Positions 9,162 to 37,112 are shown, counted from the stretch's first letter. The stretch is DNA of 37,519 nt from Octopus bimaculoides (GCF_001194135.2 NC_068998.1:12106510-12144028), one strand, 5' to 3'. Numbers and translations are program-made. Notes: generated by a model not told the origin, from the letters alone.

Positions 9162-9385
9162 TGTATGTGTGTTTGTGTGTCTGTGTTTGTCCCCCCACCA
9201 TCGCTTGATAACCGATGCTGGTGTGTTTACATCCCCGTAACTTAGCGGTTCGGCAAAAAGAGACCGATAGAATAAGTACTAGGCTTACAAAGAACAAGTC
9301 CTGAGGTCGATTTTCTTGACTAAAGGCGGTGCTCCAGCATGGCCGCAGTCAAATGACTGAAACAAGTAAAAGAGTAAAAGAGATA
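9162..9385 (+). mobile_element. SINE family A, 3' half
   Basis: gtttgtccccccaccatcgcttgataacc...aaggcggtgctccagcatggccgcagtcaaatgactgaaacaagtaaaagag. Confidence 0.85.
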
Positions 9386-10406
9386 TATATATATATATAT
9401 ACAGATATATATATATAAGGCAGTAGCTATGAATACATGAGGATTTTCACTAAGAACAAAGTTCCATTATCTGAAAAAATTATTTAAAAAATAACATACC
9501 ATGAATAAAGTTGTCAGACTTGATATGAGCATCTGGAGCGGCAATTTTAGTTACCACAGACCTAAAGTAATGAAACATCAAATAATTTATAAATTAAGAG
9601 GATATTTATGGAAAAGGAAAAAAAGAAATTATAAACTTATTTAACCCTTTAGCATTCAGATTTCTCTGTGAAATGTAATGCTTATTTTTTCACTTGGTTT
9701 GAACTGTTTTGAATTAGTCATGTAGCTTTGAGTCTTGTAGCTTTGAGATTTCAATGATGTGATGGCCCAGTAGAGTAACATAGGAACCAAAGGGGGTTCA
9801 TAGGAAAGCAAATAGTTAAGTACCACCATTCTAAAGCATAAATATTTTGAGTTCTAACAAATGTTTATTGACCATCACAATGCCTAAGTGAAATCCTAAA
9901 ATAAAAGCATTCCCATATTTGGTTTCATGCCACCAGTTTACAAGTTCAAAGATACTTAGCGGTAGTCAAATCAACTATATCCCTTGCCTATAGAAAGTCA
10001 CTGGGTACCATCACATTAACTAAATTCATACATCACTTAAAATGCAACATACTAATTAATATACTTCAAAGAAATTCTAATTGCTACTTCTAATGCAAAT
10101 ATCATTTATTTCAATACTAAGTGGTAAGCAGGGTTATTAATTAATGTAACTAATGTAGTATGAAATATGATTAAATATTTGCCTGATAACCAAATAGTTA
10201 TTATATAAAAAAAGAGGTTTGTTATTTTTATTTTTACTACAACTGCTAGTGTTCCAGCGATTTTCTAAGCTCTTAGTTTTCTGTCATGTGAAGCAAAAGC
10301 ACTCAAGTTATTATAGCTCAAACCTCATTTGAACCTGCAGAATTCAAAGTTGTTACATGCAATGAAAATCCGCTTATGAGACGTTCTAAACTTTGCTAGT
10401 ATCAAT

Positions 10407-11005
10407 CTTTCATTTAGGTAGTAAGATAACGTTCTCAGGCGGCACCGACGAAGATATTAAGATGAGAATAAGCAAGGCAAGGACCACTTTCCACCTGTTA
10501 AAAAAAGTATGGAGCGCAAGTGTAATTTCAATAAAGAACAAAATAAGAATTTTTAACACTAACGTAAAAACGGTGTTATTGTGTGGGGCTGAGACATGGA
10601 GAACAACAGTTAAGTCAAATAAGCAAATACAATCATTCATCAACAGGTGCTTGTGTAGTATACTTAAAATCAGATGGCCCGAGCGCATAAACAATATGGA
10701 GCTATGGCAAAGAACGAATCAAGTTTCGATTAGGGAGTAAATATTTAAGAAAAAGTGGAAGTGGATTGGAAACACAATTAGAAAGGACACACTAAATGTA
10801 GCGAAAAGTGCTTTACAGTGGAATACGGATGGATATAGAAAGAGGGGTAGGCCTAAGAACTCGTGGCGTTGATCAACACAAAAGGAACTAGAGAAAGGGG
10901 GACATTCATGGCAGAGTATAAGTACAGAAGCGAGAAATTATGCGACATGGAATTCAATTATAAGTGGCCTTTACTCCACATTGGAGGACTAAAGGCAAGA
11001 AGAGA
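10407..11005 (+). mobile_element. 5'-truncated RTE-clade LINE, C-terminal RT region and 3' end
   Basis: LGSKIT..GGTDEDIKMRISKARTTF, KIRIFNTNVKTVLLCGAETW, LKIRWPERINNMELW, KWKWIG, RKRGRPKNSWR; contains in-frame stops. Confidence 0.9.
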
Positions 11006-11423: not shown

Positions 11424-12494
11424 NNNNNNNNNNNNNNNNNNNNNNNNNNNNNNNNNNNNNNNNNNNNNNNNNNNNNNNNNNNNNNNNNNNNNNNNNNNNN
11501 NNNNNNNNNNNNNNNNNNNNNNNNNNNNNNNNNNNNNNNNNNNNNNNNNNNNNNNNNNNNNNNNNNNNNNNNNNNNNNNNNNNNNNNNNNNNNNNNNNNN
11601 NNNNNNNNNNNNNNNNNNNNNNNNNNNNNNNNNNNNNNNNNNNNNNNNNNNNNNNNNNNNNNNNNNNNNNNNNNNNNNNNNNNNNNNNNNNNNNNNNNNN
11701 NNNNNNNNNNNNNNNNNNNNNNNNNNNNNNNNNNNNNNNNNNNNNNNNNNNNNNNNNNNNNNNNNNNNNNNNNNNNNNNNNNNNNNNNNNNNNNNNNNNN
11801 NNNNNNNNNNNNNNNNNNNNNNNNNNNNNNNNNNNNNNNNNNNNNNNNNNNNNNNNNNNNNNNNNNNNNNNNNNNNNNNNNNNNNNNNNNNNNNNNNNNN
11901 NNNNNNNNNNNNNNNNNNNNNNNNNNNNNNNNNNNNNNNNNNNNNNNNNNNNNNNNNNNNNNNNNNNNNNNNNNNNNNNNNNNNNNNNNNNNNNNNNNNN
12001 NNNNNNNNNNNNNNNNNNNNNNNNNNNNNNNNNNNNNNNNNNNNNNNNNNNNNNNNNNNNNNNNNNNNNNNNNNNNNNNNNNNNNNNNNNNNNNNNNNNN
12101 NNNNNNNNNNNNNNNNNNNNNNNNNNNNNNNNNNNNNNNNNNNNNNNNNNNNTGTGTGTGTGTGTGTACACAAAACATTCATCATTGATTAGGGCTCGTG
12201 AATGAAATAATTGAATACTTGCTGTTTTTGTTTTTTCTTCTTAACTTCCGCCAAGATTTTCTTCTTCACAAGAACTTGCCTAGATTTTACTGTTCTTACC
12301 GTCATGCTTGGTGGCTGGAGACAAATACATAGAAACTCAGATAAGTAGGCAGAAAAATCAGAAAACAAACAAAATAAAAAAAAGAAAAGAAAAGTAAAAC
12401 AGTCATCACTTCTTTTGAATAATAACCTTAGCAATAAAGAACAGAAATTTTAGTGAGCCAGATCTGAAGAATTATTATAAAAGAATGCAGGTGC

Positions 12495-19086: not shown

Positions 19087-22000
19087 CTATAATATATAAA
19101 CGATTTCTTCAATTATTTAGAGAAAATCATTTTTGATAATGAAGGATTTTTTAAAGTTAAAAAAAATGTACCTTTTTGACAAATTTAGGAGTTTTGATTT
19201 CCACAAATGCTGCTTGGACAGCTTTCATGAAACTTCTACGGGTACTAAATGTCACGCGTCCCGATCCTTGAGGAAAAAAATCAAATTGAGAATTACTTCA
19301 AAATCTATTGTATTCAAACGTATGTATTCGTATTGAATCAGAGGAAACAAACTCATATACAAGTTGATATATTTTAAATGATTGCTTATAGTCCTAGTAG
19401 ATTACGCTTGGTTCAAGCAAATCCAATTCACATATAAGGCTGTGTGGAAAGAAATTTGCTTCCCAACCACATGGTTCCGAGCTCAATGCCACTGCATGGC
19501 ACCTTTGGCAAGTGTCTATAGCCTCTGGCTGACCAAACCCTTATGAGGGGATTTGGTAAACGGAAACTGAAAGAAGCCCGTATTACGTAAGTGAGTGCGA
19601 CCACTGCTCGACAATTAGTGTGTTTACGCCTTAACTTAACGGTACGGCAGAAAAACTGAATAAGTACTGGGGTATATTCGTTCGACTAAACTTCTTCGAG
19701 GCGGTGCCCCAGCCTGATCGCCATCTGAGTGAAACGAGAGACATTAACTTGGTCGATGCAGACTATCACTATTCCTCACACACGAGCAATAGATGCCTAA
19801 TGTAGCCGTTAAGTTTAGCTCTGGTCAAGCAGGACTGATCAAAACGTTCCAGACGAGAGTGACGTGTCTGTGGCTTCAAGACATAAGTCCTGGAGCAGCA
19901 GATGTTTTAAGAGAAATATGGAGATTTGGCTACTATTTCCAGCAGATCAAGTTAATATAGTGCTGAGGAGCCCTTACCACGCGAGTACACTTCCACCTGC
20001 ATTAGAATTTGAAGCCACGTTCTGATGAAGTCTTACGACTGAGGAAATGTTTAAGGTTTCATACGTTAATCATTAAAGTTTCATTTTTCTCAGCGTACAT
20101 TCTACCTACGGCATTTTCTTACGCACTCGCAATCTCAACCTAGATAAGAACGAAAAAAAATGGTTTTCTATCCTTGGCATAGGTTTCTCGTTACCTCTGA
20201 TTATGTTGAGCAAATAACAGCATAAAAACGTCCGAAAACCGCTAATATTAAAGCAATAACGTATATTCTTGAAATTAAAAAGGTGTTGCAAACTTCTGCA
20301 TCAATAATCAAAGGAATAACAACCAATCTGCCACTAATTCAATCACGTTTTAAAATTGGGGAATCCCAAGTCACTACAGATAATTAACATTTTGATTTTA
20401 AAAATTTGTGAGGACAAATTGGTATTTGTCGCAGATACCTTTCGTTACACAATATATACCTCGATGGTTTCTATGAAAATATTTGAGCATAAGCTTACCT
20501 ATAGGGTATTTGTGTTTATCAGTGTCAATACCAGCGTATACCACATTTTCAAACAAATCGCTCATGACATTCGAAAGAGCTTCGGCTGTCAACATCCCAT
20601 GCAGCGCCCCAACGAACACCGTCTTGGTAGAGTCCAGTCTTTGTGATGGTTGCTTTACAAAATTACTATCGCTCAACACCCACGGTATCACTTGAACCTA
20701 TAATAAAAATAATTTTTTTGGACAGTGGATCTAAGCACACAAAGCTATAAATAGCATGTAAATATCTAGTTGAAAATCCCTTTCGGATAGAAAAAGGAGT
20801 GGAAGACTTCCCGTGACGCAGGAAGCTACATCTATCCCAAGGTAAAATGACGACACGAGATGTGGGTTCGAGTTCCATGGTAAGCCTACTTTTCAAAAAA
20901 GGTTTCTCAACCCAGTATTTACATACTTAAAGCAGCGAGCTGACAAAATTGTGAGCGGTATTTCGTCAGTTCAAATGCAGTCGGGGGTTGACATTGCCTT
21001 TCATCCTTTCGGGTTGATAAAATAATTATCAATTGAGCTTTGAAGTCGATGTAATCTACTTCCAATCCTGGTGCCAAAATTTGAAACCAATATTTATATG
21101 CTCTTTATATTATGCGCGCTGCGGGATCCGCCGTTCCAAAAATAATTTGCTCTCGAAAGTCTAAATTGTTATAACGTGAAGGGAAAAAGTGTATGCACAC
21201 AAACAAAAATGGTTAAAAATAGGTGTACAGCTGGCAGAATTAATGAGGATTTCGAACAGGCCAAAGGGTACTACTTAAATACAGAGGTCCCGACATATCT
21301 ACGTAACCCTAAAACTAAGGAGTGTGCATTGTAACAACATCGTTACGTCGATGCACCGGGACCTCTAAGCAGTGCCGACTAAAGTATAATACCGACCAAT
21401 TGGAAAAAAAAAATAGAATACTTAAGTAGGCTCATAACTACTGTCTCTACCCTGTATTTTGGATTAAAGATCGTTTAGTTTCTAAACATTTAATATTTTT
21501 CATGTAAAAAAAATCCTTTGACACAAGTGATGGTCTGCTTAGGCAAACAGAAAGACCAAAAAGCTTGTTAAGAGTATAAGTTATTTTGCTATTAAACGAA
21601 AGTTTCGTCGAAAGACCTTCAGAAAAGTTACTTACAGAAAGTTAAAATGATGTCACTTATCAAATTTTGAAAAGTTCGTAAATAAATTACCTCTTTTGAT
21701 CGAATTCTTCTACTGGAAATCTTGTAATAATACTCGTTGCCGTTGGTGTAATCTTGGGTGCATGCTTGCAGTAAACCGCGAATCGATTTCTCCGTTTCGT
21801 ACAACAAGTAAACGTAGCCTAAAATACAAATGGCGTCATCATACAGGTAATCTGAAGGAAAACAATACATTCGCAGAAACCAGTTTTCGCTAATTGCAAA
21901 ACAATGGAGCTAAAGTTTAACTCACCGTCTTTGCCGGGCCATTCAATTTTCATTCCACCAAACTTGTTAAATGTAGCTTGGAGGCCGGCTAGAATGAGAA

Positions 22001-23382
22001 AATCCAGGACCGTTTACATAAAATTTACTTTATTTTTAAACTAAAAAAAATACGACAGTAAAACTTAAACTGATTACCTTCAGTAATATCCCATGGTACA
22101 CCACCCAAAAATACTTTACAGGAATAGGAAGGATTTTTATTATTTCTAGGTGGTAGTTGACCTCTCCAGGTGCAGCTGGCTTCACAGACAGCTGTGTAAA
22201 ACAAAAAAAAAAAGAAAATTCATCTCGATTCAGGAGGGGTTTTTTTCGGTTGGGGTGGAGGAGATTTTACAATCATTTTTCAGGGATATTGGTCTTCAAT
22301 GATAATGAGTGACTAACCTGCTGCATTTTTATGTAGCTTGGCCGCCCGATCAACGGCGAGTGGGTCTGGTCTGTAATACAAAGGATTCACAGCCCATCTT
22401 CTGTCGGTCAAAATGTCCATAGATGTCGAAGGTAAGAGGGCCGTAGCATTTGCTACAGCCGATGATACTGCTAGTTGGCTAGGATGAGGTAATGGCAAGG
22501 TGTCAGCTTCATATTGGTTATTAGAGCCAACATTAAGAGAGTTCTGAAAAATTTTAGCCAAAATGTCATTCGTCTAGCAATAATGATTCATTCTATCTGC
22601 TCGAAAAAATGCGATAAAATTTAAATACATTGGTATTTACCATTAATTCTACCAGGGTGGAAGTGTCAATGCTATCAGGGTAGAGAGACTTCTCGTAGTC
22701 AGAACGTATCGGTTGTAAAAGAGACTTGGAGTTTTGGTTATAGAAAATTCCCTCCACTGGAGACCGACATTCAGAGAAAGGGCTTAAAGGCGAAAGCGAG
22801 CCATAGTCGCTGAAAGAAAAAGAACACCACAAAAATATAGAGAGCATTAAATCCTATTGATCGGTTGTACGATAACTTTGGAAGTTAAAATATAAGAGTA
22901 ACCTGGAAGAATTGTGTGACGAATCTGCACGCATGCTTTGGTATCGTTCTGGTGTATAATCTGTAAGAAATTTCAAAAGGTTGTGTTAGTTTTCAGTTTT
23001 ATTGAAAAAATAAGAATAAAAGTTTATAAAAAATTAAATAAAATCGACAAGAAAGAAATTTACACGAAGTGCTGCTGCCTGACTGCGAAGTACTAAACGG
23101 ATAATATGTGTTTGAAGGACTTGAAGGAGAAACTCTTGATGAGAAAGAGTAAGGGTCGGCAGAATCTGAAAATATAAAGACCACGTTTGTTGAGTTTTAC
23201 GCGAATTGAAAAATCTTTTTTTTTTTTTTTTTGCAACAACAATTTGAAATAATACCTCGAAATTGTTCTGTTGGCATCGTACCAGAAGTTAGGGTCGTCA
23301 AATCTAAAGTATTGTCCAATAAAGAGTTGATTCTTTGCATGATTTCGTAATTACAGCCGTTATTGAAACTGTCTGGGTCCAT
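18895..23382 (-). CDS. CPEB1: CPEB1-class cytoplasmic polyadenylation element-binding protein, complete 11-exon CDS (500 aa)
   Basis: Manual splicing of exons 23382-23256, 23165-23064, 22960-22903, 22809-22641, 22573-22318, 22191-22078, 21988-21926, 21818-21691, 20697-20499, 19266-19172 and 19086-18895 gives 1503 nt in one open frame, with GT-AG at every junction. Motifs typical of the CPEB1/Orb subfamily: [11 protein letters not shown] (N-terminal), [72 protein letters not shown] and the ZZ finger CxxC...[16 protein letters not shown]....HHKP. An in-frame TAA lies upstream of the ATG at 23382. Confidence 0.95.
19172..19266 (-). CDS. CPEB1: CPEB1 coding exon 10 ([32 protein letters not shown])
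   Basis: ttcctcaag|GA TCG...AAA AAG|GTACAT, 95 nt; absent from the ORF track. Confidence 0.97.
19436..19740 (+). mobile_element. SINE family A in CPEB1 intron 9 (antisense to the gene)
   Basis: ggctgtgtggaaagaaatttgcttcccaaccacatggttcc...aggcggtgccccagc. Confidence 0.85.
20499..20697 (-). CDS. CPEB1: CPEB1 coding exon 9 (VQVIPW...RRM2...DTDKHKYPI)
   Basis: ttatag|GTT CAA...ATA G|GTAAGC, 199 nt. Confidence 0.98.
20940..21065 (+). mobile_element. SINE family B fragment in CPEB1 intron 8
   Basis: gcggtatttcgtcagttcaaat...ttgcctttcatcctttcgggttgataaa. Confidence 0.7.
21282..21367. mobile_element. About 85-bp Tc1/mariner-type MITE in CPEB1 intron 8
   Basis: TIRs agaggtcccgacatatctacgtaa / reverse complement agaggtcccggtgcatcgacgtaa (19/24 match). 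Confidence 0.65.
21691..21818 (-). CDS. CPEB1: CPEB1 coding exon 8 ([20 protein letters not shown]...SSRRIRSKE)
   Basis: attttag|GC TAC...AAA GAG|GTAATT, 128 nt. Confidence 0.96.
21926..21988 (-). CDS. CPEB1: CPEB1 coding exon 7 ([22 protein letters not shown])
   Basis: cattctag|CC...GAC G|GTGAGT, 63 nt. Confidence 0.96.
22078..22191 (-). CDS. CPEB1: CPEB1 coding exon 6 ([16 protein letters not shown]...[13 protein letters not shown])
   Basis: ttacacag|CT...GAA G|GTAATC, 114 nt; start of RRM1. Confidence 0.97.
22318..22573 (-). CDS. CPEB1: CPEB1 coding exon 5 (...[16 protein letters not shown])
   Basis: ttgctag|ACG...GCA G|GTTAGT, 256 nt; the end resembles the CPEB1 pre-RRM 'ARLHRQAAA' segment. 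Confidence 0.9.
22641..22809 (-). CDS. CPEB1: CPEB1 coding exon 4
   Basis: ctttcag|C GAC TAT...TTA ATG|GTAAAT, 169 nt, phase 2-0. Confidence 0.85.
22903..22960 (-). CDS. CPEB1: CPEB1 coding exon 3 ([20 protein letters not shown])
   Basis: ttcttacag|AT...TCCAG|GTTACT, 58 nt, phase 1-2; required to join exons 2 and 4 in frame. Confidence 0.7.
23064..23165 (-). CDS. CPEB1: CPEB1 coding exon 2 (Ser/Pro-rich)
   Basis: tttcag|AT...TCGT|GTAAAT, 102 nt, phase 1-1. Confidence 0.8.
23256..23382 (-). CDS. CPEB1: CPEB1 coding exon 1 ([28 protein letters not shown]...QFR)
   Basis: ATG at 23382-23380; donor G|GTATT; strong acceptor (T-run..ttgcag) at 23426-23427 opens 43 nt of 5'UTR; contains the conserved RIN.(I/L)LDN.LD motif. 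Confidence 0.85.
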
Positions 23383-24410: not shown

Positions 24411-24834
24411 TCAAAAATTATTTTGAAATTATAAGCAGAAATAANNNNNNNNNNNNNNNNNNNNNNNNNNNNNNNNNNNNNNNNNNNNNNNNNNNNNNNN
24501 NNNNNNNNNNNNNNNNNNNNNNNNNNNNNNNNNNNNNNNNNNNNNNNNNNNNNNNNNNNNNNNNNNNNNNNNNCCCCACTTCATCATACTCCTCCCTCTC
24601 TTACGCAACTTGCCGTGATTTTTTAATTTTGACCTTTTACGAACATTCTTTCAGAAGTGTTTTAAACATCGGGGATGTCCATCACACAAAAATGCGATCC
24701 ATTTTTGCCTCTCCAACACCTCCACTGTTTCGAAAGATGTATCAAGCTGTAACTTGTCAAGATATATGGTTTAAGGTTTTATGGTTATATTTTAGAGTTA
24801 TGGTTTAAGGTTAAATAATAAAAAATGGACGTCC

Positions 24835-25764: not shown

Positions 25765-25980
25765 AATGCTTTTCTTCTTTTTCTCTGTACTTGTTTCAGT
25801 CATTGAACTGTGGCACCGCTTGGAGGGATTTTAGTCGAAAATCGACCCCCAGTACTTATTTTAAAGTGTGGTACTTATTCTATAAGCCATCTTAGCGAGT
25901 TGCTACATGACAGGAAAGTAAACAAACCAACACCAGTTGTCATGATGTGTGGTGGGGAGGAGACAAATACACACACAAAG

Positions 25981-26013
<33 letters not shown>

Positions 26014-26160
26014 ATGGGCTTCCACACAGTTTCCGTCTACCAAATTCACTCACAAGACATCGGTCGGCCAGAGGCTATAGTAGGAGACACTTGCTCAAGA
26101 TGCCTTGCCGTGGGATTGAACCCGATACCATATGACTGTAAAGCGAACTTCTTAACCACA
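25765..26160 (-). mobile_element. SINE family A
   Basis: tacttgtttcagtcattg...cttcttaaccacag, reverse complement of the family A consensus seen elsewhere in the window. Confidence 0.85.
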
Positions 26161-26523
26161 GCTGGAGAAAAAAAAAGTGGACTAATTCTGGCTGGAATGC
26201 TTTAACCATTGATCTGTTCCATCAATACTAACCTCAACCTAAACAACTACTACTACTACAATAAAAACAATCNNNNNNNNNNNNNNNNNNNNNNNNNNNN
26301 NNNNNNNNNNNNNNNNNNNNNNNNNNNNNNNNNNNNNNNNNNNNNNNNNNNNNNNNNNNNNNNNNNNNNNNNNNNNNNNNNNNNNNNNNNNNNNNNNNNN
26401 NNNNNNNNNNNNNNNNNNNNNNNNNNNNNNNNNNNNNNNNNNNNNNNNNNNNNNNNNNNNNNNNNNNNNNNNNNNNNNNNNNNNNNNNNNNNNNNNNNNN
26501 NNNNNNNNNNNNNNNNNNNNNNN

Positions 26524-28320: not shown

Positions 28321-28400
28321 NNNNNNNNNNNNNNNNNNNNNNNNNNNNNNNNNNNNNNNNNNNNNNNNNNNNNNNNNNNNNNNNNNNNNNNNNNNNNNNN

Positions 28401-28478: not shown

Positions 28479-28669
28479 TGTTTGTAGGTATGTGTGTGTG
28501 TGTGTGTACATATATGTATGTATATAATATGTTTATGTATATGAGGGTCAAAGACTTTTCTCAGGCCTTAGACTCATAAGGCCAGTTTCACATTTTTGTC
28601 TGCTGATTGAAGTAGAGCAACATGAGATGAAGTGTTTTGTACAAATTGTGCGTAGGTTGTTTGAATATA

Positions 28670-29620
28670 TTTCTCCAAGTCTACTGCCAAACAAATGGTG
28701 TTATAACTGATAAACAGGCAGGAGGAAAAAAAGGAGTTTGGGGCTATGCTGATCAGCTCCTCCTTCTCAAAACTGTCTTTAAGGAAACCGAGCAACATCG
28801 CCGTTATCTCTTAACGATATGGCTAGACTACAAGAAGGTGTTCGACTCTGTGCCTTACTCATGGGTGATAGAATCACTACACCTTGCCAAAGCACCAGCT
28901 GCTGTAGTGAATTCCATTGAAAGTCTAACGACAACACAGTCCGCACAGTTATCATTGACAACTACTAAAGCAACACCTATTGTTGCAAACAAAATTAAGC
29001 TATCAACAGGCATGTTCCAAGGTGATAATTTATCTGCAACGTTGTTTGTACTGGCAGTGAATCCCTTGTCAGCCCGGTTAACAAAATGACAAGGCGACAT
29101 GCTGGGAGATGCAGGCAGGAATAAAATTAATGTCACCCACACATTTTTGTTGATGACTAAAGTTATATTCTGGTAATATAAACAACATAAAGAGACAAAT
29201 AGAACTAATTACAACATTCTCACGAGACATAGGAATGCAGTTTGGGCAAGATAAGTGCTCATGGATGGTAGTCAACCGAGGAAAGATTGTCGACCAGATA
29301 GAGAACATGTACATCAATGAATTGTCTATCTCTTCTATCTCCGATGAAGAAAACTACAAGTATCTCGGAATCGATGAGAATGTTGCATGCGTTGGTGTTG
29401 TGACTAAAGCCAGAATAACAAAAGAATGTTTCTGTAGACTCTGGAAAATACGGAACTCAGAGTCGTCTGCATTTAATAAGACCATATCTCACAATGGTTT
29501 TGCAGTGCCAGTGCTAGTATCAACATTTAGGATATTGGACTGGACACTCGACATGATACGCAGCCTGGACAACAAAACTGGAGGGCTACTAACCACCACT
29601 GGCAACTTCCACAAATTTAA
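28670..29620 (+). mobile_element. R4/Dong-like non-LTR retrotransposon RT fragment (pseudogenised)
   Basis: KQAGGKKGVWG.ADQLL, WLDYKKVFDSVPYSW, GMFQGDNLSATLFVLAVNPLS, degraded MDD motif near 29150, FGQDKC, YKYLG; frameshifted. Clade assignment is from motif memory. Confidence 0.8.
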
Positions 29621-30641
29621 CTCTTCACTTCTAGGTGAATTTACAAATACTATTACCCATTTATAAGGCAATAAGAAAAAATGTTAAATATAAAAAAACT
29701 ACTGTGCAGGCACTCTGAGAATACAGCTGTCTCATGCGTATTGGTTCCGGTAGGGAGGCAACTTGGAGGCTTCTCCGGGCGGGACACACTCCAGTTACGC
29801 CCAGGTCTGTCTTAGCAGTACTATAGGCCCTCAAGCAAATTAAGAATCTGGGCCCTATAATAATTTATTTATTAACAGCAAGTCACAGCATACATAGACC
29901 AGAATTACGATCCTGGGACCAGCTGGACCCCTGGGCAACTGCCCAATGTACCCATGTCTTAAGACGACACTGGCTACGTCACTGAAGTGTATGAGATATA
30001 ACCTGTTTGGATAAGCGGTAGCACTTCCAGGTTTTAATGTCTCACAGGTTTCTTCAGGTAAGAGACTACAGCTAAGGATTCCGAATGAATATTCTTCGTG
30101 CTGACTCCGGATGTAAGCCCTAACGGCCACACCATGCATTATCAGCGTTGAAAGACATTAATTAATAATCATACTGAACAATATTACACAAAGTTTTATA
30201 GCTAACGAGATATGTGGAGCACCCGTCATCGTTCACGACGAAGTGCAAGTTGTAGTCGATAGGCAATAATGAGAATGAGAAATCGAAACCATCTAACTTA
30301 ACTCGGTTTGCAAGAAAATACACCCTATTTCTAAAGTGCTCTAAGGTATATACAAAGATATTTTATAGCTAGACACGAAACCTGATATATTTTAAGGGGG
30401 AACAAACGAAGGAATTGCAACGAAGAGAGATTATCCTAAATGGGAATCAAACTCTTCTTGCGAACACGACACACCGCAAGTTTAATGTGCCTTAGTTCTT
30501 ATGTAGATATGCAGACTGTCAAGGAAAAGTATATATCGATTCATTCGACTGTTTTATTTCTGGAACTTATTTGAATAGATTCTGAAAATTTTGACTCTTT
30601 TACTCCAAAGGGAACATTGTTACGTCAAAATGGTGCCCTTG

Positions 30642-30850: not shown

Positions 30851-31867
30851 AAGCTGGTACCCTTGCTACCCAATGTGTTAAGGGTCACGCTGCACACACA
30901 CTGAATGACTGAGAGTCTGGAATGATCTTCTCATCTTCCGAACTCGGAAATATTCAGCTATCAAGGAAGACTGTCAGTTTTTGTTGTTTTTTTTTTGGGG
31001 GGGGGGCACAAATTCTTGATATATCTTAGAGAAATATTGATTTTAATCAATTTTATCTCAACTGGAATATAGCAGATACAGTTTTTAACGCCAATTGTCA
31101 ATGAATAATTTCTTTTTACCCACCCATGTTTTCCGGGTAGTTTTTTCTTTTTTTTTTTTACATCTGTTTGAAGTCCAAAACAGGAAATTGGTTATAAAAT
31201 ATCATCTGTAAATAATAATTATTTACAGATGACCTCGACTGAAAAAAGGATGATGACAAATATTGATTCAGTATACAAGGATATACACTTACTTTCCTGT
31301 TCAGGAACTTCTGATTAAAACAAAGCGACTTAAAAGTATCTGGCCTGCAATCTATCACCAGATTATGGAGATGTGCTGTTAGCTGTCACTAGAGACCCCA
31401 CGATCTGTGGAACCATTAATTCTTGAAGACATAATTACGGTAAATTAGAAATCTAATTTTCTTTTCACACTTTGTTTTCTTATTAAATCAAATTGATGAA
31501 TTATTTATTGTTGTTAGTACTGTTGTTGTTGTTGTTTGTTATTATTATTATTATTATTATTATACTGTGAGTTCAAATATCGTTGGCGTGGTCTTTGTCT
31601 ATAATCCGTTTCGGGGCCGATAAAATAATACCAAATGAGCATTAGTGTCGTGTAACTGACCAACCAGCTTCCCTTTAAAATATTTGCTTTGGGCCTAAAT
31701 CAGACATAGACACAAGACATAAGGATACACACACACACACACACATTCTTTTATTCTTTATTCTTGTAAAGAGCGGAAGAAATGCCGCTAATAAAGTAAT
31801 GTTATAACTGTAATCAATTATCAATTAAACACTAATATCGTTATCGATAACATATTTTATGTTATAT

Positions 31868-32140
31868 TCTTTTTCTCTTTTACTTGTTTCAGTCATTTGA
31901 CTGTGGCCATGCTGGAGCACCGCCTTTAGTCGAGCAAATCGACTCCAGGACTTATTCTTTGGAAGCCTAGTACTTATTCTAGCGGTCTATTTTGCCGAAC
32001 CGCTAATTTACGGGGACGTAAACACACCACCATCGGTTGTCAAGCGATGTTTGGGGACAAACACAGACACACAAACATATATACGACGGGCTTCTTTCAG
32101 TTTCCATCTACCGAATCCACTCACAAGGCTTTGGTCGGCC
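31868..32140 (-). mobile_element. SINE family A
   Basis: tttacttgtttcagtcatttgactgtggccatgctggagcaccgcctttagtcgag...cacaaggctttggtcggcc. Confidence 0.9.
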
Positions 32141-32634
32141 TGCATCGATATGTGCTAATGAACTGGACAGAACACTTTGCCAAANNNNNNNNNNNNNNNN
32201 NNNNNNNNNNNNNNNNNNNNNNNNNNNNNNNNNNNNNNNNNNNNNNNNNNNNNNNNNNNNNNNNNNNNNNNNNNNNNNNNNNNNNNNNNNNNNNNNNNNN
32301 NNNNNNNNNNNNNNNNNNNNNNNNNNNNNNNNNNNNNNNNNNNNNNNNNNNNNNNNNNNNNNNNNNNNNNNNNNNNNNNNNNNNNNNNNNNNNNNNNNNN
32401 NNNNNNNNNNNNNNNNNNNNNNNNNNNNNNNNNNNNNNNNNNNNNNNNNNNNNNNNNNNNNNNNNNNNNNNNNNNNNNNNNNNNNNNNNNNNNNNNNNNN
32501 NNNNNNNNNNNNNNNNNNNNNNNNNNNNNNNNNNNNNNNNNNNNNNNNNNNNNNNNNNNNNNNNNNNNNNNNNNNNNNNNNNNNNNNNNNNNNNNNNNNN
32601 NNNNNNNNNNNNNNNNNNNNNNNNNNNNNNNNNN

Positions 32635-32695
32635 GTGGTAGCTGTGGAGAATATCCTCAATGAAAATGGTTCTCCTCCTGCTCTTATCCTTGCTG
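32635..32695 (+). CDS. SatP-like gene, partial exon (VVAVENILNENGSPPALILA)
   Basis: Starts at the gap edge; donor GCT G|GTAAGT (phase 1) matches the phase-1 acceptor at 33701. Confidence 0.7.
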
Positions 32696-35600
32696 GTAAG
32701 TTTTTATGTCTTGGCTTGTTTGTTGGGAGTAATAAAGTTATAAGCAAAAGAGATGATATTGTTTTTGAAAGGTTTCTGGTCAATAGAGAATTTCACAGCT
32801 TATATATATTCTGTGGTGTAGTAATTTGTGATAAATGGAAGCAGTCGAAGCATTAAGAACAGAAAAAAAACGTTTGATTTGGTTCGCAAACGATGTTGAC
32901 GACGTTAAGAAGATGATGGTGGCGACAGAGATGGAGGTCCTGAATGCTGCTGGACCAAGTGCTGATGAATCTCCATGTGGCTGCTGTTATGTCGTCGCTT
33001 GGACTGGCTGTGTGCTTTGTGGTCAGTGGCTAGACCTCAAAAGGTCTGGAACCGAAAGACATCGACTCGATGTGTCGCTGAAGTTTTATAGCGTGCAGTC
33101 AGCTCACCGGAAGTTTAGAAGAGACTGTCTCACGTGACCTTATCTGAAGGCTGCGATTAGTTGGGTTGCATCTTGGCGCGCAATAGAGCAAGAGACAAAT
33201 TGCACCAATATCAACCAATCAGAGTAGTGGACAACAGGGTCCAAAAGGGCGGCCGATGGCTAGCTGTTATCTACTACGTCCGTATTTATGTATATATAAC
33301 AGAGAGAGAGAGAGGAATTTCCCTTAATTCGTACGCTACAAAATAAATATATGATATATTCTACATAATTTTCAAGTGTCTCTCCGTTTCAATGGTTAAA
33401 AGCCTCGTTAAACTATTTTCAAGTCTTATTGCCACATGTCTTTGACAAAATATTTTACTCAACCCACACTACATCAGTGGAATTCATAGAATCGATATCA
33501 GTGGCATTTCAATATGAGATTGACTTGAGCTAGGAATCAAATCCACGTGTACAAATTCTTGGTCGAAAAGCACACACGAAAGTGAGAGATGATATATTCA
33601 TGATAATTTAATGAGAGAACATGGTGTGCTAAAATTTCAGTAACACTTCGATTTATTCATTCCGTGTGACGTAATTAATATTTATTCTTTTATGTTGTAG
33701 GTGTCCATCTCATTGTTATTGGAGGATTTCTGCAATTACTCGCCGGATTTATGTCTTATCGACGTAACGATCACTTGACAGGATCTGCTTTCATTGTCTT
33801 TGCCTCTCTTTGGACAATTCAGGGTATCAACCACATAATGATGACTTCATTGCCACAAACAGCAATGCAATACGGAGTTCTACCCGGAATGATTGGCTTC
33901 ATGGCTCTGTCTGTCGTACTCAGCATGTGTGCAGCAACAGTAAACTATATCATGCCTCCAGTTCTGGTTGCTATCATGATAGCTTTAATTTTCGAGGGCG
34001 TCGGTTTATTTTTCCTCTGGGGCAGGCGTGTAGCTGCTGCATTCGAAATCATTATTGCTTTATCTGGAATTTACGGCGTTGTTGTAATGACACTGAAAGG
34101 AGTAAGTCAAAGATATATTTTACCTGGTTTCGGAAATGCTCCTTACGACGTGCTTCTAGTTCGAACCAAAGCACCGAAATCGAAACAAAACGAAAAAAAG
34201 AAAAACACAAAATATGCTGAACCAATGGGGATGGGGTTTATCGGTAATGTGGTTCCTGCCACAGTGTTCGCCTTTTATCATTTTGGTTTCTTCACCGATT
34301 TTCGTCCAGCAATTCCAATGTTCTTAAATAGTTTATTTTGCCACCTATGCGCCAGTTATTATTCGTTTCTACGCCAAGACTTCTTCAATGCAATTCTATA
34401 CATCATTTATACAGTATTCTGGACATCAAAAGGCATTACTGAACTTCTGATAACGATGGATTTCGCTGGTATAGAAACACTTCGCACTAATTTCTATGGA
34501 CAGTGGGCTCTGTTAGTAATTATGCTGATCTTGTTGGTGTGTTCCATGTGCCAGACTAAAATCCTTTATTTATACAACTTACTCTTCACTTTACTGATTG
34601 TTCTTTCTCTTGATCACATACCGATACCCGTTTACAACTTCACATTCGGAGTTCCTTGCTGTTTAATTGCCATTTTTAGTCTTTTTATGTCTACCTCTTA
34701 TCTGATTAACTCGATCGCCGAAAAAACTGTCCTCTACGTTGGTGCAGAAGTCTGTGACGTTGAAAAGCTGCGTCGTCTTTTCGAGAGACTAACAGCTTGC
34801 ACAAGGTTTGTACTGCTTTATAATTGGAACTTGAAGATTAAAACTAATGACTAAATTATTGAATTATCGATCGGCTGACTAACATTTTTCGTATTCTTTT
34901 CAGGAGTGTTGGTGCCAAAGTAAAGTATTATGATGAAAGTCTTGCTCCCGGCGAGGTTGTCGAAACACTTTGCTTTCTTGGCAACAGTATCTCGTGCATA
35001 TGCATTTCTTCCTTAGAGATTACACACGGCACTGAATGCTTACCATGGTTACTCGTCACTGGAGTGGCCCTTTTGCTCTACGTTGCCAGATGTTCATATA
35101 CTTGTGGAAGTTTATCAAAAACTTATATGCTATTCGTGCACACATTTTATTGGATTTGCTGGTCAATATTTTTAATAAATCGTACGTATGTTCATTATTC
35201 TTTATTGCTCTCTCACTTTGCGTATAAGACCTCAACTCGTAATAACATCTGATTGGCGACTTTTGTGATTTGTGTATATATGTGTGTAATGCATGTGTTT
35301 AACGTAGACAAAGAGGCAAAACTCAGGTATACATTTTTATATGATTTTCATGTATTTCTGTTATATTATCTTTGTAGCATCTTTGGCTTTTGTTCTCCGA
35401 CCAGCATCTCTCGCTGTAATCACTCTACATACTCTGGGTATGTTCTTCGTTATGTCATTCCATAAGATATGGATCCCATTTACTCTGTTCTTTGAACTCA
35501 ACATGATAGCTTTCGTGATCAGATGCTTTGCTGTTAACCAGCCATGGATGAACTTCGTCACAGCTTTACTAGCAGGTAAGTTTGTTGGTGGGACGATCCT

Positions 35601-36252
35601 AGAGCGAGGTAGCAAGGTGATAGGACTGGAACTAGGGGGAGATGGGTGTACGGTGAGGACATTTTTGTTGTTGCTGTTTAGTCCCGATTAACTCTTGATG
35701 CAGTGAACTTATGATGGAAAGCATTTGACCAGCGAATGCCCTGTCTTTTTGTATATCAGGGACTACATTTGATCAACATGCAGAATAATTTGTAAAAATA
35801 AGTGATGGTAAACTGTGTCAGAATTGATGATAATGAAATCCCATAATTTCGTCAGCCCAAGTACCTAACTATACTATATATTCTAATGATATCATGAGTA
35901 TTTCGGATATAGCAGCTGAGGTACGCCGTTGCGGTACATTTTTCACTGGTGTTTATTTTCTACCCAACAATGAAAATCAGTGAAAATCCACCTGAAAGCA
36001 TTTGAGATTCGATGCGTAGAGTTCCTATGTTCGTTTAGGTCACATATGTAGTCGTGAAGTTGTGAATAGCTTTTTTCCCTCTCTCATTTCTTCACGTGTC
36101 CTGACGATAGGGTCCTGACTCCGAAATTTCTAACTGCAATGTAAAAGTTCAGCAGTTGTTTTAACTTCACTTTTGTATTTCATTTCCAGTTGTTTCGACC
36201 TTAACGGTATTTTATCTAATTTTATTTTAAAATATCTTCATTAAAAGTGCAG

Positions 36253-36318
<66 letters not shown>

Positions 36319-37112
36319 TGTGGGTGAAAAGTATAAATGTTGGCCCAAAAAGCGAAATTATTGTGCTTTACGTGCAAAGTTCCTTGAGATATCAGTTCAA
36401 CACCGATCCCTTTTCATTCTTGCCGTCAGAAATGCAGTGAATGAATGATTAGAATGTTGTAATCCTATAACCAACGACGCTATTATTCAATCTTGGCATA
36501 GAAAAATAAATAGATATAGGCGTAAGCGTGTCTGTGGAGTAATAAGTTTACTTCCTAACCACATGCTTTCGGGTTCAGTCCCTCAGCATTGCACATTGAG
36601 CCAGGGTCATCTGTTATAACCCCGGGCTGACTAAAGTCTCGTGAGTGGATTTGGTAAATAGAAACTGAAAGAAGCCCGTCATACGCGAGGGTGTTTGTGT
36701 CTGTACCCCACCACCGCTAGACAACCGGTGTTGGTTTGTTTACGTCCTCGTAACTTAGCGATTCGGCATTAGGAACTGATAGAATAAGTACCCGGCTTTA
36801 AAACCAAAAATGAAAGTGCTGCAGTCGATTCGTTTGACTAAAACCCTTCAAGGTGGTGCTCCAGCATAGCCGCAGTTCAGTAACTGAAACAAGTGAAAGA
36901 TGTAGATAGATAAGATATATCCAGAGGAGGAAAATTGTTGTAAACATTAATAATGTACGTTTGTAATACATATAAATACATCGGGCTATATCTGTTTTAT
37001 TTAAGGAATTGTCTCACTCTATGGAACCTTTGCTGGGATGACAAATGGAACATTACAAGGTCATCTTGTACCTTTGGGAGATCCTATATTAAAAGTAAGG
37101 ATTGCGTTATGA
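32635..37112 (+). CDS. Multi-pass membrane protein with three tandem GPR1/FUN34/YaaH (SatP/Ady2-like) repeats; 5' end hidden in a gap
   Basis: Exons <32635-32695, 33701-34805, 34904-35181, 35378-35575 and 37006-37094 (or read-through to TGA 37110-37112) splice in frame, giving at least about 577 aa. Repeat 1 IGGFLQLLAGFMSYRRNDHLTGSAFIVFASLW aligns by eye with E. coli SatP [32 protein letters not shown]. Each repeat ends in a SatP-like 'Y...(N)...xxLP.G' segment (IYGVVVMTLKGVSQRYILPGFG; LFMSTSYLINSIAEKTVLYVG; LYGTFAGMTNGTLQGHLVPLG). Confidence 0.85.
33084..33323 (-). promoter_or_regulatory. Promoter-like motif cluster inside an intron of the SatP-like gene
   Basis: TATAAAA on the minus strand 33084-33090; ACCGGAAGT 33106-33114; TCACGTGAC 33130-33138; TTGGCGCGCAA 33173-33183; CCAAT 33205 and 33215; GGGCGG 33247-33252; GGAATTTCCC 33314-33323. 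Confidence 0.5.
33701..34805 (+). CDS. SatP-like gene, large exon (most of repeat 1 and all of repeat 2)
   Basis: tatgttgtag|GT GTC CAT...ACA AG|GTTTGT, 1105 nt; contains ORF 33751-34854 of the track. Confidence 0.92.
34904..35181 (+). CDS. SatP-like gene exon (repeat 3, first half)
   Basis: Branch point GACTAAC at about 34877-34883; ttttcag|G AGT...AAT C|GTACGT, 278 nt, phase 2-1. Confidence 0.85.
35378..35575 (+). CDS. SatP-like gene exon (repeat 3, middle)
   Basis: tctttgtag|CA TCT...GCA G|GTAAGT, 198 nt, hydrophobic. Confidence 0.85.
36255..36317. repeat. (TG)n microsatellite
   Basis: Directly visible. Confidence 0.98.
36525..36900 (+). mobile_element. SINE family A in an intron of the SatP-like gene
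   Basis: cttcctaaccacatgctttcgggttcagtcc...ggtggtgctccagcatagccgcag...tgaaacaagtgaaaga. Confidence 0.85.
37006..37112 (+). CDS. SatP-like gene exon (GIVSLYGTFAGMTNGTLQGHLVPLGDPILK[VRIAL*])
   Basis: ttttatttaag|GA ATT; completes repeat 3. It ends either at donor AAA|GTAAGG (37094) or at TGA 37110-37112. Confidence 0.8.

What the first reader, a model, noticed from the sequence alone, without database searches (positions are those of the whole stretch)
32635..37112. Intron-containing animal gene with three fused SatP/Ady2 (GPR1/FUN34/YaaH) channel repeats
Seen in sequence: five exons splice in frame into at least about 577 aa with three homologous hydrophobic units of roughly 170-190 aa. Repeat 1 is closest to SatP. 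Repeat 2 starts KYAEPMGMGFIGN where the family has NPAPLGL. Repeat 3 is the most diverged (VVETLCFLGN). Established: bacterial SatP and fungal Ady2/Ato are single 6-TM-unit proteins, SatP assembles as a hexamer, and the family is linked to acetate/monocarboxylate flux, with ammonium export proposed for the yeast Ato proteins. The family is studied almost only in microbes. Inference: a 3-in-1 chain could dimerise into a pseudo-hexamer with three non-equivalent pores (different substrates, or regulatory non-conducting repeats). That would be an uncharacterised animal carboxylate/ammonium transport system. Spliceosomal introns and SINE insertions argue against contamination. One 1.1-kb exon covering almost two repeats may hint at a retro- or HGT-derived origin.
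Basis: partly seen in the sequence, partly recalled or inferred. Interest (0 to 1): 0.75.

Follow-up and report, generated by a model that had tools for sequence, protein, structure and literature searches.

The report
Octopus triple acetate-channel–YrdC fusion gene
This is the front three-quarters of a real, expressed octopus gene for a membrane protein made of three fused copies of a microbial-type acetate channel followed by a YrdC enzyme domain; this animal protein family was first described in 2025-26 and its function is still untested.

Summary
RNA contigs confirm all four splice junctions, and the exons read in frame into 577 aa made of three homologous six-helix units.

Each unit's orthologue profile hits only SatP in the PDB (E 2e-6, 9e-11, 8e-6). 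The AlphaFold model matches SatP (TM 0.76-0.79). The octopus sequence alone gets no Pfam PF01184 hit.

Corrections:
- The coding sequence does not stop at 37112. The exon ends at 37094 and is spliced on to a C-terminal Sua5/YrdC domain beyond the window.
- Only 104 nt of mRNA lie in the gap, so no further repeat is hidden upstream.
- The 1.1-kb exon is ancestral. Three intron positions and phases are shared with scallop, amphioxus and elephant shark, which argues against recent HGT or a retrogene.

The architecture and the dimer-to-pseudo-hexamer idea were already published for vertebrates (Ghasemi et al., bioRxiv 2025; iScience 2026). This gene is the mollusc orthologue, about 853 aa.

New here:
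- The YrdC fusion is widespread in molluscs.
- The channel's Phe constriction residue is Asn, Asp or Ser in every unit of 95 orthologues.
- NPAPLGL is replaced by (Y)AEPxxLG.

Function is unknown. The most likely reading is small-anion or carboxylate pores coupled to a cytosolic adenylate-forming domain.

The parts
31360..31439 (+). 5'UTR exon (at least this much), followed by donor GT at 31440
   Evidence: The 3544-nt RNA contig of run X1 that carries the coding exons also maps here. Sequence ...ATTACG|GTAAAT. A second run has a contig over 31229-31409.
32185..32634 (+). Assembly gap hiding 104 nt of mRNA. This should hold the start codon and about 32 codons: the N-terminus, the YAEPGALGL motif and TM1 of unit 1.
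   Evidence: Transcript contig positions 3339-3442 lie between the pieces at 31439 and 32635. Argonauta orthologue P0003 has 32 aa (METPKQENEAFAAILYAEPGALGLIANIMAAI) before VVAVENIL.
32635..32695 (+). 3' end of first coding exon (VVAVENILNENGSPPALILAG; loop between TM1 and TM2 of unit 1). Phase-1 intron follows.
   Evidence: Joint 32695|33701 in RNA contigs of X1 and X12. The intron position and phase are shared with scallop, amphioxus and elephant shark.
32931..33023 (+). First coding exon of the database models (MEVLNAAGPS...CVLCG). Probably a prediction artefact inside intron 1.
   Evidence: P0001 and P0002 start here. No RNA contig joins it to 33701. The area is covered by short, mismatched, high-depth contigs typical of a repeat.
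33701..34805 (+). 1105-nt exon: TM2-TM6 of unit 1, the K-rich cytosolic linker, and the whole of unit 2 (unit 2 starts at 34198, KKNTKYAEPMGMGF).
   Evidence: ORF, RNA contigs, 99.7% tblastn match to P0001, profile hits to SatP.
34904..35181 (+). Exon: linker helix between units 2 and 3, plus TM1-TM3 of unit 3 (unit 3 from about 34932). The RefSeq model uses an internal donor at 34986 that skips 65 aa.
   Evidence: Joints 34805|34904 and 35181|35378 in X1 and X2. The full exon is conserved in Haliotis and others. The short form appears only in P0002 and P0003.
35378..35575 (+). Exon: TM4-TM5 and the start of TM6 of unit 3. Contains the near-invariant Glu (FFELN) next to the L131-equivalent position.
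   Evidence: RNA contigs; conservation counts.
37006..37094 (+). Exon: end of TM6 of unit 3 (...LVPLGDPILK). The phase-0 intron at 37095 marks the boundary to the YrdC linker and domain, which lies beyond the window.
   Evidence: RNA contigs of X1, X2 and X12 cover 37004-37095 and then continue with CTAGCCAACCACCGGTTAGATTAACCAAGT, which reads ASQPPVRLTK. The intron is conserved in all four species compared.
36540..36880 (.). SINE-like dispersed repeat inside the last intron. Related copies lie at 31868-32142, 3513-3753, 9256-9381 and 25910-26121.
   Evidence: the repeat finder families D12, D13, D15, D16 and I5. Extreme RNA-contig depth over 31875-32142.

Best explanation
Identity (near certain). 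The window holds the 5' part of the Octopus bimaculoides-type orthologue (LOC106868648) of a bilaterian gene. The gene encodes about 853 aa: three tandem six-helix units homologous to the AceTr/SatP/Ato acetate channel (18 TM helices), then a cytosolic C-terminal Sua5/TsaC/YrdC-like domain.

Mechanism (inferred).
- Each unit keeps the SatP fold and forms its own narrow pore.
- By analogy with the SatP homohexamer, two chains pair into a six-unit ring with three kinds of pore.
- The pores are no longer classical acetate pores. The hydrophobic Phe of the F-L-Y constriction is replaced by Asn, Asp or Ser in every unit. The NPAPLGL Asn is an invariant Glu. Unit 3 has a conserved Glu at the constriction.
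- Both termini of a six-TM SatP unit are cytoplasmic, so the YrdC domain sits in the cytosol under the ring.
- That domain keeps the PTDTVY, KxR and SxN nucleotide/substrate-binding motifs of threonylcarbamoyl-AMP synthases.

Most likely it binds ATP and adenylates a small carboxyl or carbamate compound (bicarbonate plus an amine, or a short carboxylate) whose passage through the membrane units it is coupled to.
For: Gene and splicing.

Orthologues:
- 312 hits. P0001 is 100% identical. Molluscs, amphioxus and vertebrates have proteins of about 860 aa, many with precomputed PF01184+PF01300.
- Three intron positions and phases are shared across octopus, Pecten, Branchiostoma and Callorhinchus.

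Homology of each unit to SatP:
- Profile against PDB hits only 5ZUG/5YS3: 2e-6, 9e-11, 8e-6.
- PF01184 hits in orthologue units; NCBIfam acetate uptake transporter in Haliotis.
- The R2 profile reaches 180-300-aa PF01184 proteins.

Fold:
- AF2 pLDDT 85-86, pTM 0.78-0.80, 6+6+6 helices plus an alpha/beta domain.
- Foldseek: SatP is the only membrane match at probability 1.00 (TMt 0.76-0.79); Sua5/TsaC/HypF match the C-terminal domain.

YrdC motifs: alignment to P. abyssi Sua5, E 1.6e-17. The KxR/SxN tetrad and the bicarbonate, threonine and ATP substrates are described in PMC6004061.

Pore residues.

An independent 3x fusion in a metagenomic protein fits a half-hexamer chain being a viable design.

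The published dimer hypothesis and enzyme-coupling idea.
Against: - No transport, oligomer or enzyme data exist for any member.
- I could not inspect model coordinates or run a multimer prediction, so the half-ring geometry and the dimer are untested here.
- The octopus units alone do not reach Pfam significance.
- The defining NPAPLGL and FLY motifs are lost, so the units may not conduct at all.
- The YrdC domain scores below NCBIfam's equivalog cut-off (111.9 vs 123.2 bits), so it need not make TC-AMP.
- The YrdC part is outside the window and is inferred from RNA loose ends and identical database proteins.
Confidence: 0.55

Rival explanations
1. Channel with a regulatory YrdC domain. The three SatP-like units conduct a small ion or metabolite. 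The YrdC-like domain has lost catalysis and serves as a cytosolic ligand sensor (ATP, threonine or a nucleotide) that gates the pores.
For: The YrdC domain falls below the TsaC/Sua5 equivalog cut-offs. Animals keep a separate canonical YRDC (annotation names). Family-specific conserved cysteines (PICICxSN, ASCK) differ from Sua5.
Against: All catalytic-site motifs (PTDTVY, KxR, SxN, STVV) are invariant or nearly so across 67-68 orthologues. That is the pattern expected of an active site, although a pure binding site could also conserve them.
Confidence: 0.2
2. Membrane-anchored enzyme. The 18-TM region no longer transports anything. It only tethers a TC-AMP synthase-like enzyme to a particular membrane, or oligomerises it.
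For: The family-defining pore motifs are lost. Phe of FLY is absent in 95/95 sequences in all units and NPAPLGL is altered. Unit 3 is barely recognisable by Pfam.
Against: An anchor would not need 18 helices with 40 invariant positions. Many of these are polar residues inside the membrane units: H23, Q32, R41, D44, H45, E119, K153, R158 in unit 1, and the near-invariant E521 in unit 3. The substitutions at the constriction are themselves conserved (Asn 91/91 in unit 1), which points to a selected, altered pore and not to decay.
Confidence: 0.15
3. A stand-alone roughly 577-aa three-repeat SatP-like carboxylate/ammonium channel ending at 37112, possibly of retrogene or recent HGT origin, with perhaps more repeats upstream.
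For: In-frame stop at 37110-37112 if the donor at 37095 is ignored. A large 1.1-kb exon.
Against: RNA contigs from three runs splice at 37094 into YrdC-linker sequence. Only 104 nt of mRNA lie in the gap. The large exon and its flanking introns are conserved across Bilateria.
Confidence: 0.03
4. Artefact: contamination, a pseudogene or an assembly chimera.
For: The window has eight N gaps. Database gene models for this locus are inconsistent with each other.
Against: GT-AG introns, host SINE-like repeats in introns, a spliced 3.5-kb transcript in several runs, an intact frame, and 75-83% identical orthologues in Argonauta and others.
Confidence: 0.01

Closest known systems
Vertebrate 'ATO' proteins with three Gpr1/Fun34/YaaH domains fused to Sua5/YciO/YrdC (Ghasemi et al., bioRxiv 2025, 10.1101/2025.05.26.656167; iScience 2026, PMC13316224). 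Example: zebrafish si:ch211-153b23.3.
   Same: Same architecture, same order of units, about 30-33% identity over the full length, and three shared intron positions. This is orthology. The pseudo-hexamer-by-dimerisation idea applies equally.
   Different: The paper describes the fusion as vertebrate, says the YrdC domain is absent from the protostome clade, and suggests HGT for protostome sequences nested among vertebrates. Here the fused gene is found in cephalopods, gastropods, bivalves and a chiton (a paralogue), often as two adjacent paralogues. Its intron structure argues for vertical descent. A platypus member also exists, although the paper says 'except mammals'.
Bacterial SatP (YaaH), PDB 5ZUG / 5YS3: hexameric succinate-acetate channel
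   Same: Each octopus unit is a six-helix bundle homologous to SatP over nearly its whole length. The model superposes with TM 0.76-0.79 and rmsd 3.1 A. The Trp of the SYGxFW motif is invariant in all three units.
   Different: SatP is a single 188-aa unit. Here three units share one chain with an enzyme domain. NPAPLGL becomes (Y)AEPxxLG. The F17/Y72/L131 constriction becomes N/F/I, N/Y/L and N/H/L in the octopus. Identity is only about 16-17%.
Fungal Ato1/Ady2, Gpr1, AcpA (AceTr family, PF01184)
   Same: Same superfamily. Hetero-oligomers of non-identical Ato paralogues have been proposed in yeast and Candida. Functionally, that is what a three-different-units chain would hard-wire.
   Different: The fungal proteins have a single unit, keep NPAPLGL and FLY, have long N-terminal tails and lack an enzyme fusion.
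TsaC/Sua5/YRDC threonylcarbamoyl-AMP synthases, and the YrdC-like domains of HypF and TobZ
   Same: The C-terminal domain has the YrdC fold (Foldseek E 3e-10 to Sua5, 2.5e-5 to HypF) and the KxR/SxN tetrad.
   Different: It is tethered to an 18-TM region and has no SUA5 or Kae1-like partner domain. It scores below the equivalog cut-offs and has family-specific conserved cysteines. A role in tRNA t6A synthesis is doubtful.
Metagenomic triple-PF01184 protein P0185/P0238 (JGI 3300081534)
   Same: Three AceTr units in one chain (PF01184 x3, E 4e-64).
   Different: Its three units are near-identical to each other and show no one-to-one correspondence with animal units 1-3. It has no YrdC domain and no introns, and sits on a gene-dense contig of ORFans. 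This is an independent, recent triplication.

Membership tests
AceTr / GPR1-FUN34-YaaH (Pfam PF01184) | The protein itself matches the family HMM | tested here: not met
   hmmscan of the 582-aa model and of each octopus unit at E<=10 gave no PF01184 hit. Unit 1 is N-terminally truncated by the gap, which costs it the motif region.
AceTr / GPR1-FUN34-YaaH (Pfam PF01184) | Homology of each unit to bona fide members at profile level | tested here: met
   Orthologue profiles hit only SatP in the PDB: R1 2.2e-6, R2 9.2e-11, R3 8.3e-6. PF01184 is found in 19/22 R1, 5/23 R2 and 1/22 (E 0.37) R3 orthologue units. The R2 profile retrieves PF01184 proteins from 1.84e9 representatives.
AceTr / GPR1-FUN34-YaaH (Pfam PF01184) | Six-transmembrane-helix unit with the SatP fold | tested here: met
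   AF2 models (pLDDT 85.1 and 86.4) show 6+6+6 helices in the complete Haliotis orthologue. The octopus model shows 5+6+6 because its database N-terminus is wrong. Foldseek matches SatP with TMt 0.76-0.79 at probability 1.00. Foldseek reports one alignment per target, so a per-unit superposition was not obtained.
AceTr / GPR1-FUN34-YaaH (Pfam PF01184) | NPAPLGL(M/F) signature at the start of TM1 | tested here: not met
   Unit 1 (orthologues; hidden in the gap in octopus) reads EPGALGLIAN. Unit 2 reads EPMGMGFIGN. Unit 3 has no alignable motif (VVETLCFLGN). Glu replaces Asn in 92/92 (R1) and 95/95 (R2); the Pro is kept.
AceTr / GPR1-FUN34-YaaH (Pfam PF01184) | F-L-Y hydrophobic constriction (SatP F17, L131, Y72) | tested here: not met
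   F17 position: Asn 91/91 (R1); Asn, Asp or Ser (R2); Asn or Ser (R3). Y72 position: Phe/Tyr (R1); Tyr in molluscs and His in chordates (R2); His in octopus, Leu in other molluscs and Tyr in chordates (R3). L131 position: Ile/Leu/Met/Val, variable.
AceTr / GPR1-FUN34-YaaH (Pfam PF01184) | SY[F]GxFW motif in TM3 | tested here: inconclusive
   Only the Trp is kept: 95/95, 95/95 and 93/94. The rest of the motif reads VFASLW, IYTVFW and VHTFYW.
AceTr / GPR1-FUN34-YaaH (Pfam PF01184) | Hexameric ring; transport of acetate, lactate or succinate | not testable with these tools
   No multimer prediction, no model coordinates and no experiment were available.
Bilaterian 3xAceTr-YrdC fusion ('vertebrate ATO', PMC13316224) | Three consecutive six-helix AceTr domains in one chain | tested here: met
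   hhalign between units; models.
Bilaterian 3xAceTr-YrdC fusion ('vertebrate ATO', PMC13316224) | C-terminal Sua5/YciO/YrdC domain on the same polypeptide | tested here: met
   The domain is outside the window. RNA contigs splice exon 37006-37094 to ASQPPVRLTK. The 100%-identical P0001 and the RefSeq P0002 carry PF01300. Sua5 matches: E 1.6e-17 by sequence and 3e-10 by fold.
Bilaterian 3xAceTr-YrdC fusion ('vertebrate ATO', PMC13316224) | Orthology: full-length collinear similarity and shared gene structure | tested here: met
   96-100% query coverage at 30-53% identity to mollusc, amphioxus and vertebrate proteins of about 860 aa. Three introns of identical position and phase in four phyla or classes.
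TsaC/Sua5 threonylcarbamoyl-AMP synthase | YrdC fold with the KxR/SxN tetrad | tested here: met
   KERP and SSANPSG align to KGRP and PSANISG of P. abyssi Sua5. Fold match. The tetrad is defined in PMC6004061.
TsaC/Sua5 threonylcarbamoyl-AMP synthase | Score above the curated equivalog cut-off (TIGR00057) | tested here: not met
   111.9 bits (octopus P0002) and 98.2 bits (Haliotis) against a cut-off of 123.2.
TsaC/Sua5 threonylcarbamoyl-AMP synthase | Makes TC-AMP and supports tRNA t6A | not testable with these tools
   Needs an enzyme assay or complementation of sua5/tsaC mutants.

The most novel reading that the evidence does not exclude
The protein is a hard-wired 'conduct-and-activate' machine. 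In this reading a pseudo-hexameric ring of three different SatP-derived pores delivers a small anion (bicarbonate, or a short mono- or dicarboxylate) directly to a membrane-docked YrdC-type enzyme. That enzyme converts it into an acyl- or carbamoyl-adenylate. This would be a form of vectorial metabolite activation not described in animals. It would be ancestral to Bilateria and lost in therian mammals. In zebrafish the paralogues are co-induced with irg1l and noxo1a on infection and stress, so it may be tied to epithelial stress or innate-immune carboxylate metabolism.
Probability: 0.2. Interest if true: 0.8.

Novelty: new member of a known kind. Interest (0 to 1): 0.4.

Why it matters
AceTr channels were long thought to be absent from animals. 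This gene shows that a triplicated, enzyme-fused version was already present in the protostome-deuterostome ancestor and is kept in molluscs, amphioxus and non-therian vertebrates, yet nobody knows what it carries or makes.

The mollusc data add three things to the published vertebrate description:
- The YrdC fusion is not vertebrate-specific, and it is inherited vertically.
- The classical acetate-pore signature is systematically replaced by polar residues, so the substrate is probably not simply acetate.
- Current RefSeq models for cephalopods are wrong at the 5' end and skip 65 aa of unit 3.

The result is a well-defined target for transport, enzymology and cryo-EM work. It does not open a new category.

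Tried and rejected
- Single-sequence searches failed. Pfam on the spliced model and on each unit gave nothing relevant at E<=10. phmmer against the PDB gave only chance hits. Profiles of orthologues were needed.
I used the database protein P0001 (wrong first exon) and the complete Haliotis orthologue instead.
It was split into three stretches.
The octopus TM1/YAEP motif of unit 1 is therefore inferred from Argonauta.
- Raw-read runs X23 and X24 gave no reads on the exons at the 6% sampled.
- A Kyte-Doolittle helix count was too noisy to use.
- tRNA and Rfam scans of the window found nothing.
- A search with the mollusc paralogue P0166 returned only 8 proteins, so it did not extend the taxon range. 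Presence or absence in annelids, arthropods, echinoderms and cnidarians remains open.
- Rejected: extra repeats in the gap; a stop at 37112; the RefSeq first exon at 32931-33023; the RefSeq short donor at 34986; retrogene or recent HGT origin; correspondence between the metagenomic triple-AceTr protein and the animal units.

Full report
**What is in the sequence**

On the + strand, five open segments join through GT-AG introns into one frame: 32635-32695, 33701-34805, 34904-35181, 35378-35575 and 37006-37094. The joined frame gives 577 codons.

Assembled RNA contigs from three public runs of the same organism carry these joints exactly: 32695|33701, 34805|34904 and 35181|35378. Matching loose ends show 35575|37006 as well.

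One contig of 3544 nt contains all of these exons.
- It also maps to 31360-31439, an exon followed by a GT donor.
- It leaves just 104 nt unaccounted for between that exon and 32635, so those 104 nt lie in the N gap 32185-32634.
- In the Argonauta orthologue, 32 residues (METPKQENEAFAAILYAEPGALGLIANIMAAI) precede VVAVENIL.
- The gap therefore hides the start codon, the signature motif and TM1 of unit 1. It does not hide a further repeat.

All three runs leave the genome at 37094/5 and continue with CTAGCCAACCACCGGTTAGATTAACCAAGT, which reads ASQPPVRLTK. That is the sequence that follows ...DPILK in the database proteins.

**Which gene it is**

A search of 5.8 billion proteins with the spliced model gave 312 hits.
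- One 791-aa protein is 100% identical over the shared exons.
- Octopus bimaculoides LOC106868648 and Argonauta hians LOC115219664 are hits.
- Proteins of about 860 aa follow from gastropods, bivalves, amphioxus, cartilaginous and bony fishes, amphibians, birds and platypus, at 30-53% identity over 96-100% of the query.
- Many of these carry precomputed Pfam PF01184 (Gpr1_Fun34_YaaH) plus PF01300 (Sua5_yciO_yrdC).

The octopus database models differ from the RNA evidence in two ways.
- They start at an exon inside my intron 1 (32931-33023). No contig joins this exon to 33701, and it lies in repeat-like, mismatched, high-depth sequence.
- RefSeq uses an internal donor at 34986 that deletes 65 aa (TM1-TM2 of unit 3). 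The RNA contigs and the other molluscs keep these residues.

Adding 32 + 577 + 244 residues gives a true protein of about 853 aa.

**Are the three units SatP-like?**

Neither the model nor any single octopus unit hits PF01184, even at E<=10, and phmmer against the PDB finds nothing.

With alignments of 22-23 orthologues per unit the picture is clear.
- Each profile hits only SatP among 177,635 PDB sequences: 5ZUG/5YS3 at E 2.2e-6 for unit 1, 9.2e-11 for unit 2 and 8.3e-6 for unit 3. The match covers nearly the whole 188-aa channel for units 1 and 2, and TM2-TM6 for unit 3.
- The units are homologous to each other: hhalign E 1e-12, 6e-8 and 2.5e-13.
- Single orthologue units hit PF01184 in 19/22 cases (unit 1), 5/23 (unit 2) and 1/22 weakly (unit 3).
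- The unit-2 profile was run against 1.84 billion cluster representatives. It finds the animal family first, then a tail of 180-300-aa proteins. The four of those I checked are PF01184 members at 1e-17 to 1e-34.
- AlphaFold2 models of the octopus protein (pLDDT 85.1, pTM 0.78) and of the complete Haliotis orthologue (86.4, 0.80) show 6+6+6 transmembrane helices, a short linker helix and a C-terminal alpha/beta domain.
- In Foldseek against the PDB, the only membrane proteins matched at probability 1.00 are SatP chains (TM-score on target 0.76-0.79, rmsd 3.1 A). The C-terminal domain matches Sua5/TsaC, and more weakly the YrdC-like domain of HypF.

**How it differs from classical AceTr channels**

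The family is defined by NPAPLGL(M/F) at TM1, the F-L-Y hydrophobic constriction and SY[F]GxFW in TM3. Counts below come from 95 orthologues.
- The motif Asn is always Glu in units 1 and 2, giving (Y)(A/S)EPxxLG. Unit 3 has no recognisable motif.
- The constriction Phe is never kept. It is Asn in 91/91 unit 1; Asn in molluscs and Asp in chordates in unit 2; Asn or Ser in unit 3.
- The Tyr position is Phe (unit 1), Tyr or His (unit 2) and His, Leu or Tyr (unit 3).
- Only the Trp of the TM3 motif is invariant in all three units.
- Unit 3 has a nearly invariant Glu next to the L131-equivalent position.
- Unit 1 is the most constrained (29 invariant columns in the per-unit alignments), then unit 2 (15) and unit 3 (3).

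These are conserved replacements, not decay. I read them as three selected but altered and non-equivalent pores, and I would not assume acetate specificity.

**The missing quarter**

The C-terminal 244 aa lie outside the window.
- They align to Pyrococcus abyssi Sua5 at E 1.6e-17 and keep PTDTVY, KxR (KERP), SxN (SSANPSG) and STVV.
- The KxR/SxN tetrad and the substrates (L-threonine, bicarbonate/CO2, ATP) are described in PMC6004061.
- The domain scores below NCBIfam's equivalog cut-off for TC-AMP synthase: 111.9 against 123.2 bits.
- It carries family-specific conserved cysteines.

SatP's two termini are cytoplasmic; this comes from my own knowledge of the SatP structures and was not tested here. 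An 18-helix chain would therefore put this domain in the cytosol. The K/R-rich inter-unit linker (8 K/R in 30 residues) is consistent with that.

**Evolution**

I recovered the genomic loci of the scallop, amphioxus and elephant-shark orthologues and solved their exon structures exactly.
- Three introns of the octopus gene are shared by all four species, at the same alignment column and in the same phase...AG|VHL (phase 1), the middle of unit 3 (phase 1), and the unit 3/YrdC-linker boundary (phase 0).
- Scallop shares all five octopus introns: four at the same alignment column and the R2-R3 linker intron within three columns, in the same phase. Its exon sizes also match: about 1089, 279, 200 and 92 nt against 1105, 278, 198 and 89 nt.
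- The large exon is present everywhere and is longer in chordates (1.40-1.47 kb).

This speaks for vertical descent of the already triplicated and fused gene from the protostome-deuterostome ancestor.

A second, more divergent YrdC-fused paralogue exists in molluscs (Argonauta, Candidula, scallops, a chiton) and in fishes (si:ch211-153b23.4). In scallops it lies next to the orthologue.

**Literature**

Ghasemi et al. (bioRxiv May 2025; iScience June 2026, PMC13316224) already report the following:
- an Ato-related family in vertebrates with three six-helix domains and a C-terminal Sua5/YciO/YrdC fusion;
- an AlphaFold-SatP superposition (TM 0.82);
- the hypothesis that two protomers form a SatP-like six-domain ring;
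- the ideas that the enzyme domain makes a carbamoyl-AMP-like product or couples import to assimilation.

They state that the fusion is absent from the protostome clade and that the family is absent from mammals. My hits include many molluscs with the fusion, and a platypus protein.

No functional study exists. Zebrafish paralogues appear only in RNA-seq lists, co-induced with irg1l and noxo1a on infection or nanoparticle stress. I treat that as a lead and nothing more.

**Verdict**

The feature is a new (mollusc) member of a recently described, functionally unknown family.

The identity of the gene is near certain. The channel-plus-adenylating-enzyme mechanism is an inference, at roughly even odds.

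Noticed in passing
window 20398-22850, minus strand: Exon-like ORFs of an RNA-binding protein gene. ORF 21628-21870 hits Pfam RRM_7 (PF16367, E 1e-11). From memory, ORF 20398-20691 ([15 protein letters not shown]...[12 protein letters not shown]) resembles the second RRM of CPEB2-4-type proteins. It is probably the neighbouring gene, in the opposite orientation.
   Followed up: partly
window 32931-33341 (inside intron 1): Database models (P0001, P0002) take 32931-33023 as the first coding exon. RNA contigs here are short, mismatched and very deep, and none joins this exon to 33701. It looks like a transcribed repeat, so the RefSeq N-terminus is probably wrong because the true first exon sits in the assembly gap.
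   Followed up: partly
window 34986/34987: RefSeq models for Octopus bimaculoides and Argonauta hians use an internal GT donor here. This deletes 65 aa (TM1-TM2 of unit 3). The RNA contigs of two runs show only the full exon to 35181. A rare isoform cannot be excluded from contigs.
   Followed up: partly
window 31868-32142, 36540-36880, 3513-3753, 9256-9381, 25910-26121: Copies of a dispersed SINE-like element, in both orientations. RNA-contig word depth over 31875-31941 reaches about 290,000, so it is one of the most abundant repeat transcripts in these libraries. ARAGORN and Rfam find no tRNA or known RNA family in the window.
   Followed up: partly
window 28637-29666 (+) and 10393-10740 (+): Retroelement fragments: RVT_1 reverse transcriptase (E 3e-8) and a DUF6451 match (E 3e-14).
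   Followed up: no
L004 5001-6953 (JGI metagenome 3300081534): An intron-less 650-aa protein made of three nearly identical PF01184 units, without YrdC. It sits on a gene-dense contig of ORFans plus two methyltransferases, possibly a giant virus or a compact microbial eukaryote. This is an independent triplication of the AceTr unit, which suggests that a three-in-one (half-hexamer) chain is a recurrent solution.
   Followed up: partly
L003 1-447 (Pecten maximus); also Mizuhopecten LOC110456033/034: A second, divergent 898-902-aa YrdC-fused paralogue lies head-to-head about 550 bp upstream of the scallop orthologue. Argonauta's paralogue (P0157, 1163 aa) is on the same contig as its orthologue, and the zebrafish paralogues share one BAC name. 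Adjacent paralogue pairs may be ancient.
   Followed up: partly
P0097 (Ornithorhynchus anatinus LOC103171094, 872 aa): A platypus orthologue exists, although the published survey says the family occurs in every major vertebrate lineage except mammals. The loss may be confined to therians.
   Followed up: no
literature: PMC6980646, PMC11140123: Zebrafish si:ch211-153b23.3/.4/.5 are listed next to irg1l, noxo1a and epidermal keratins among genes induced by Shigella infection, and as hub genes with irg1l after nanoparticle exposure. This hints at an epithelial stress or innate-immune context.
   Followed up: no
window 5038-5685, 6656-6999, 8780-9161, 11424-12152, 24445-24573, 26273-26523, 28321-28400, 32185-32634: Eight N gaps, mostly flanked by (TA)n/(TG)n microsatellites. 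The window comes from a draft assembly, and repeat finder output is dominated by N-run artefacts.
   Followed up: no
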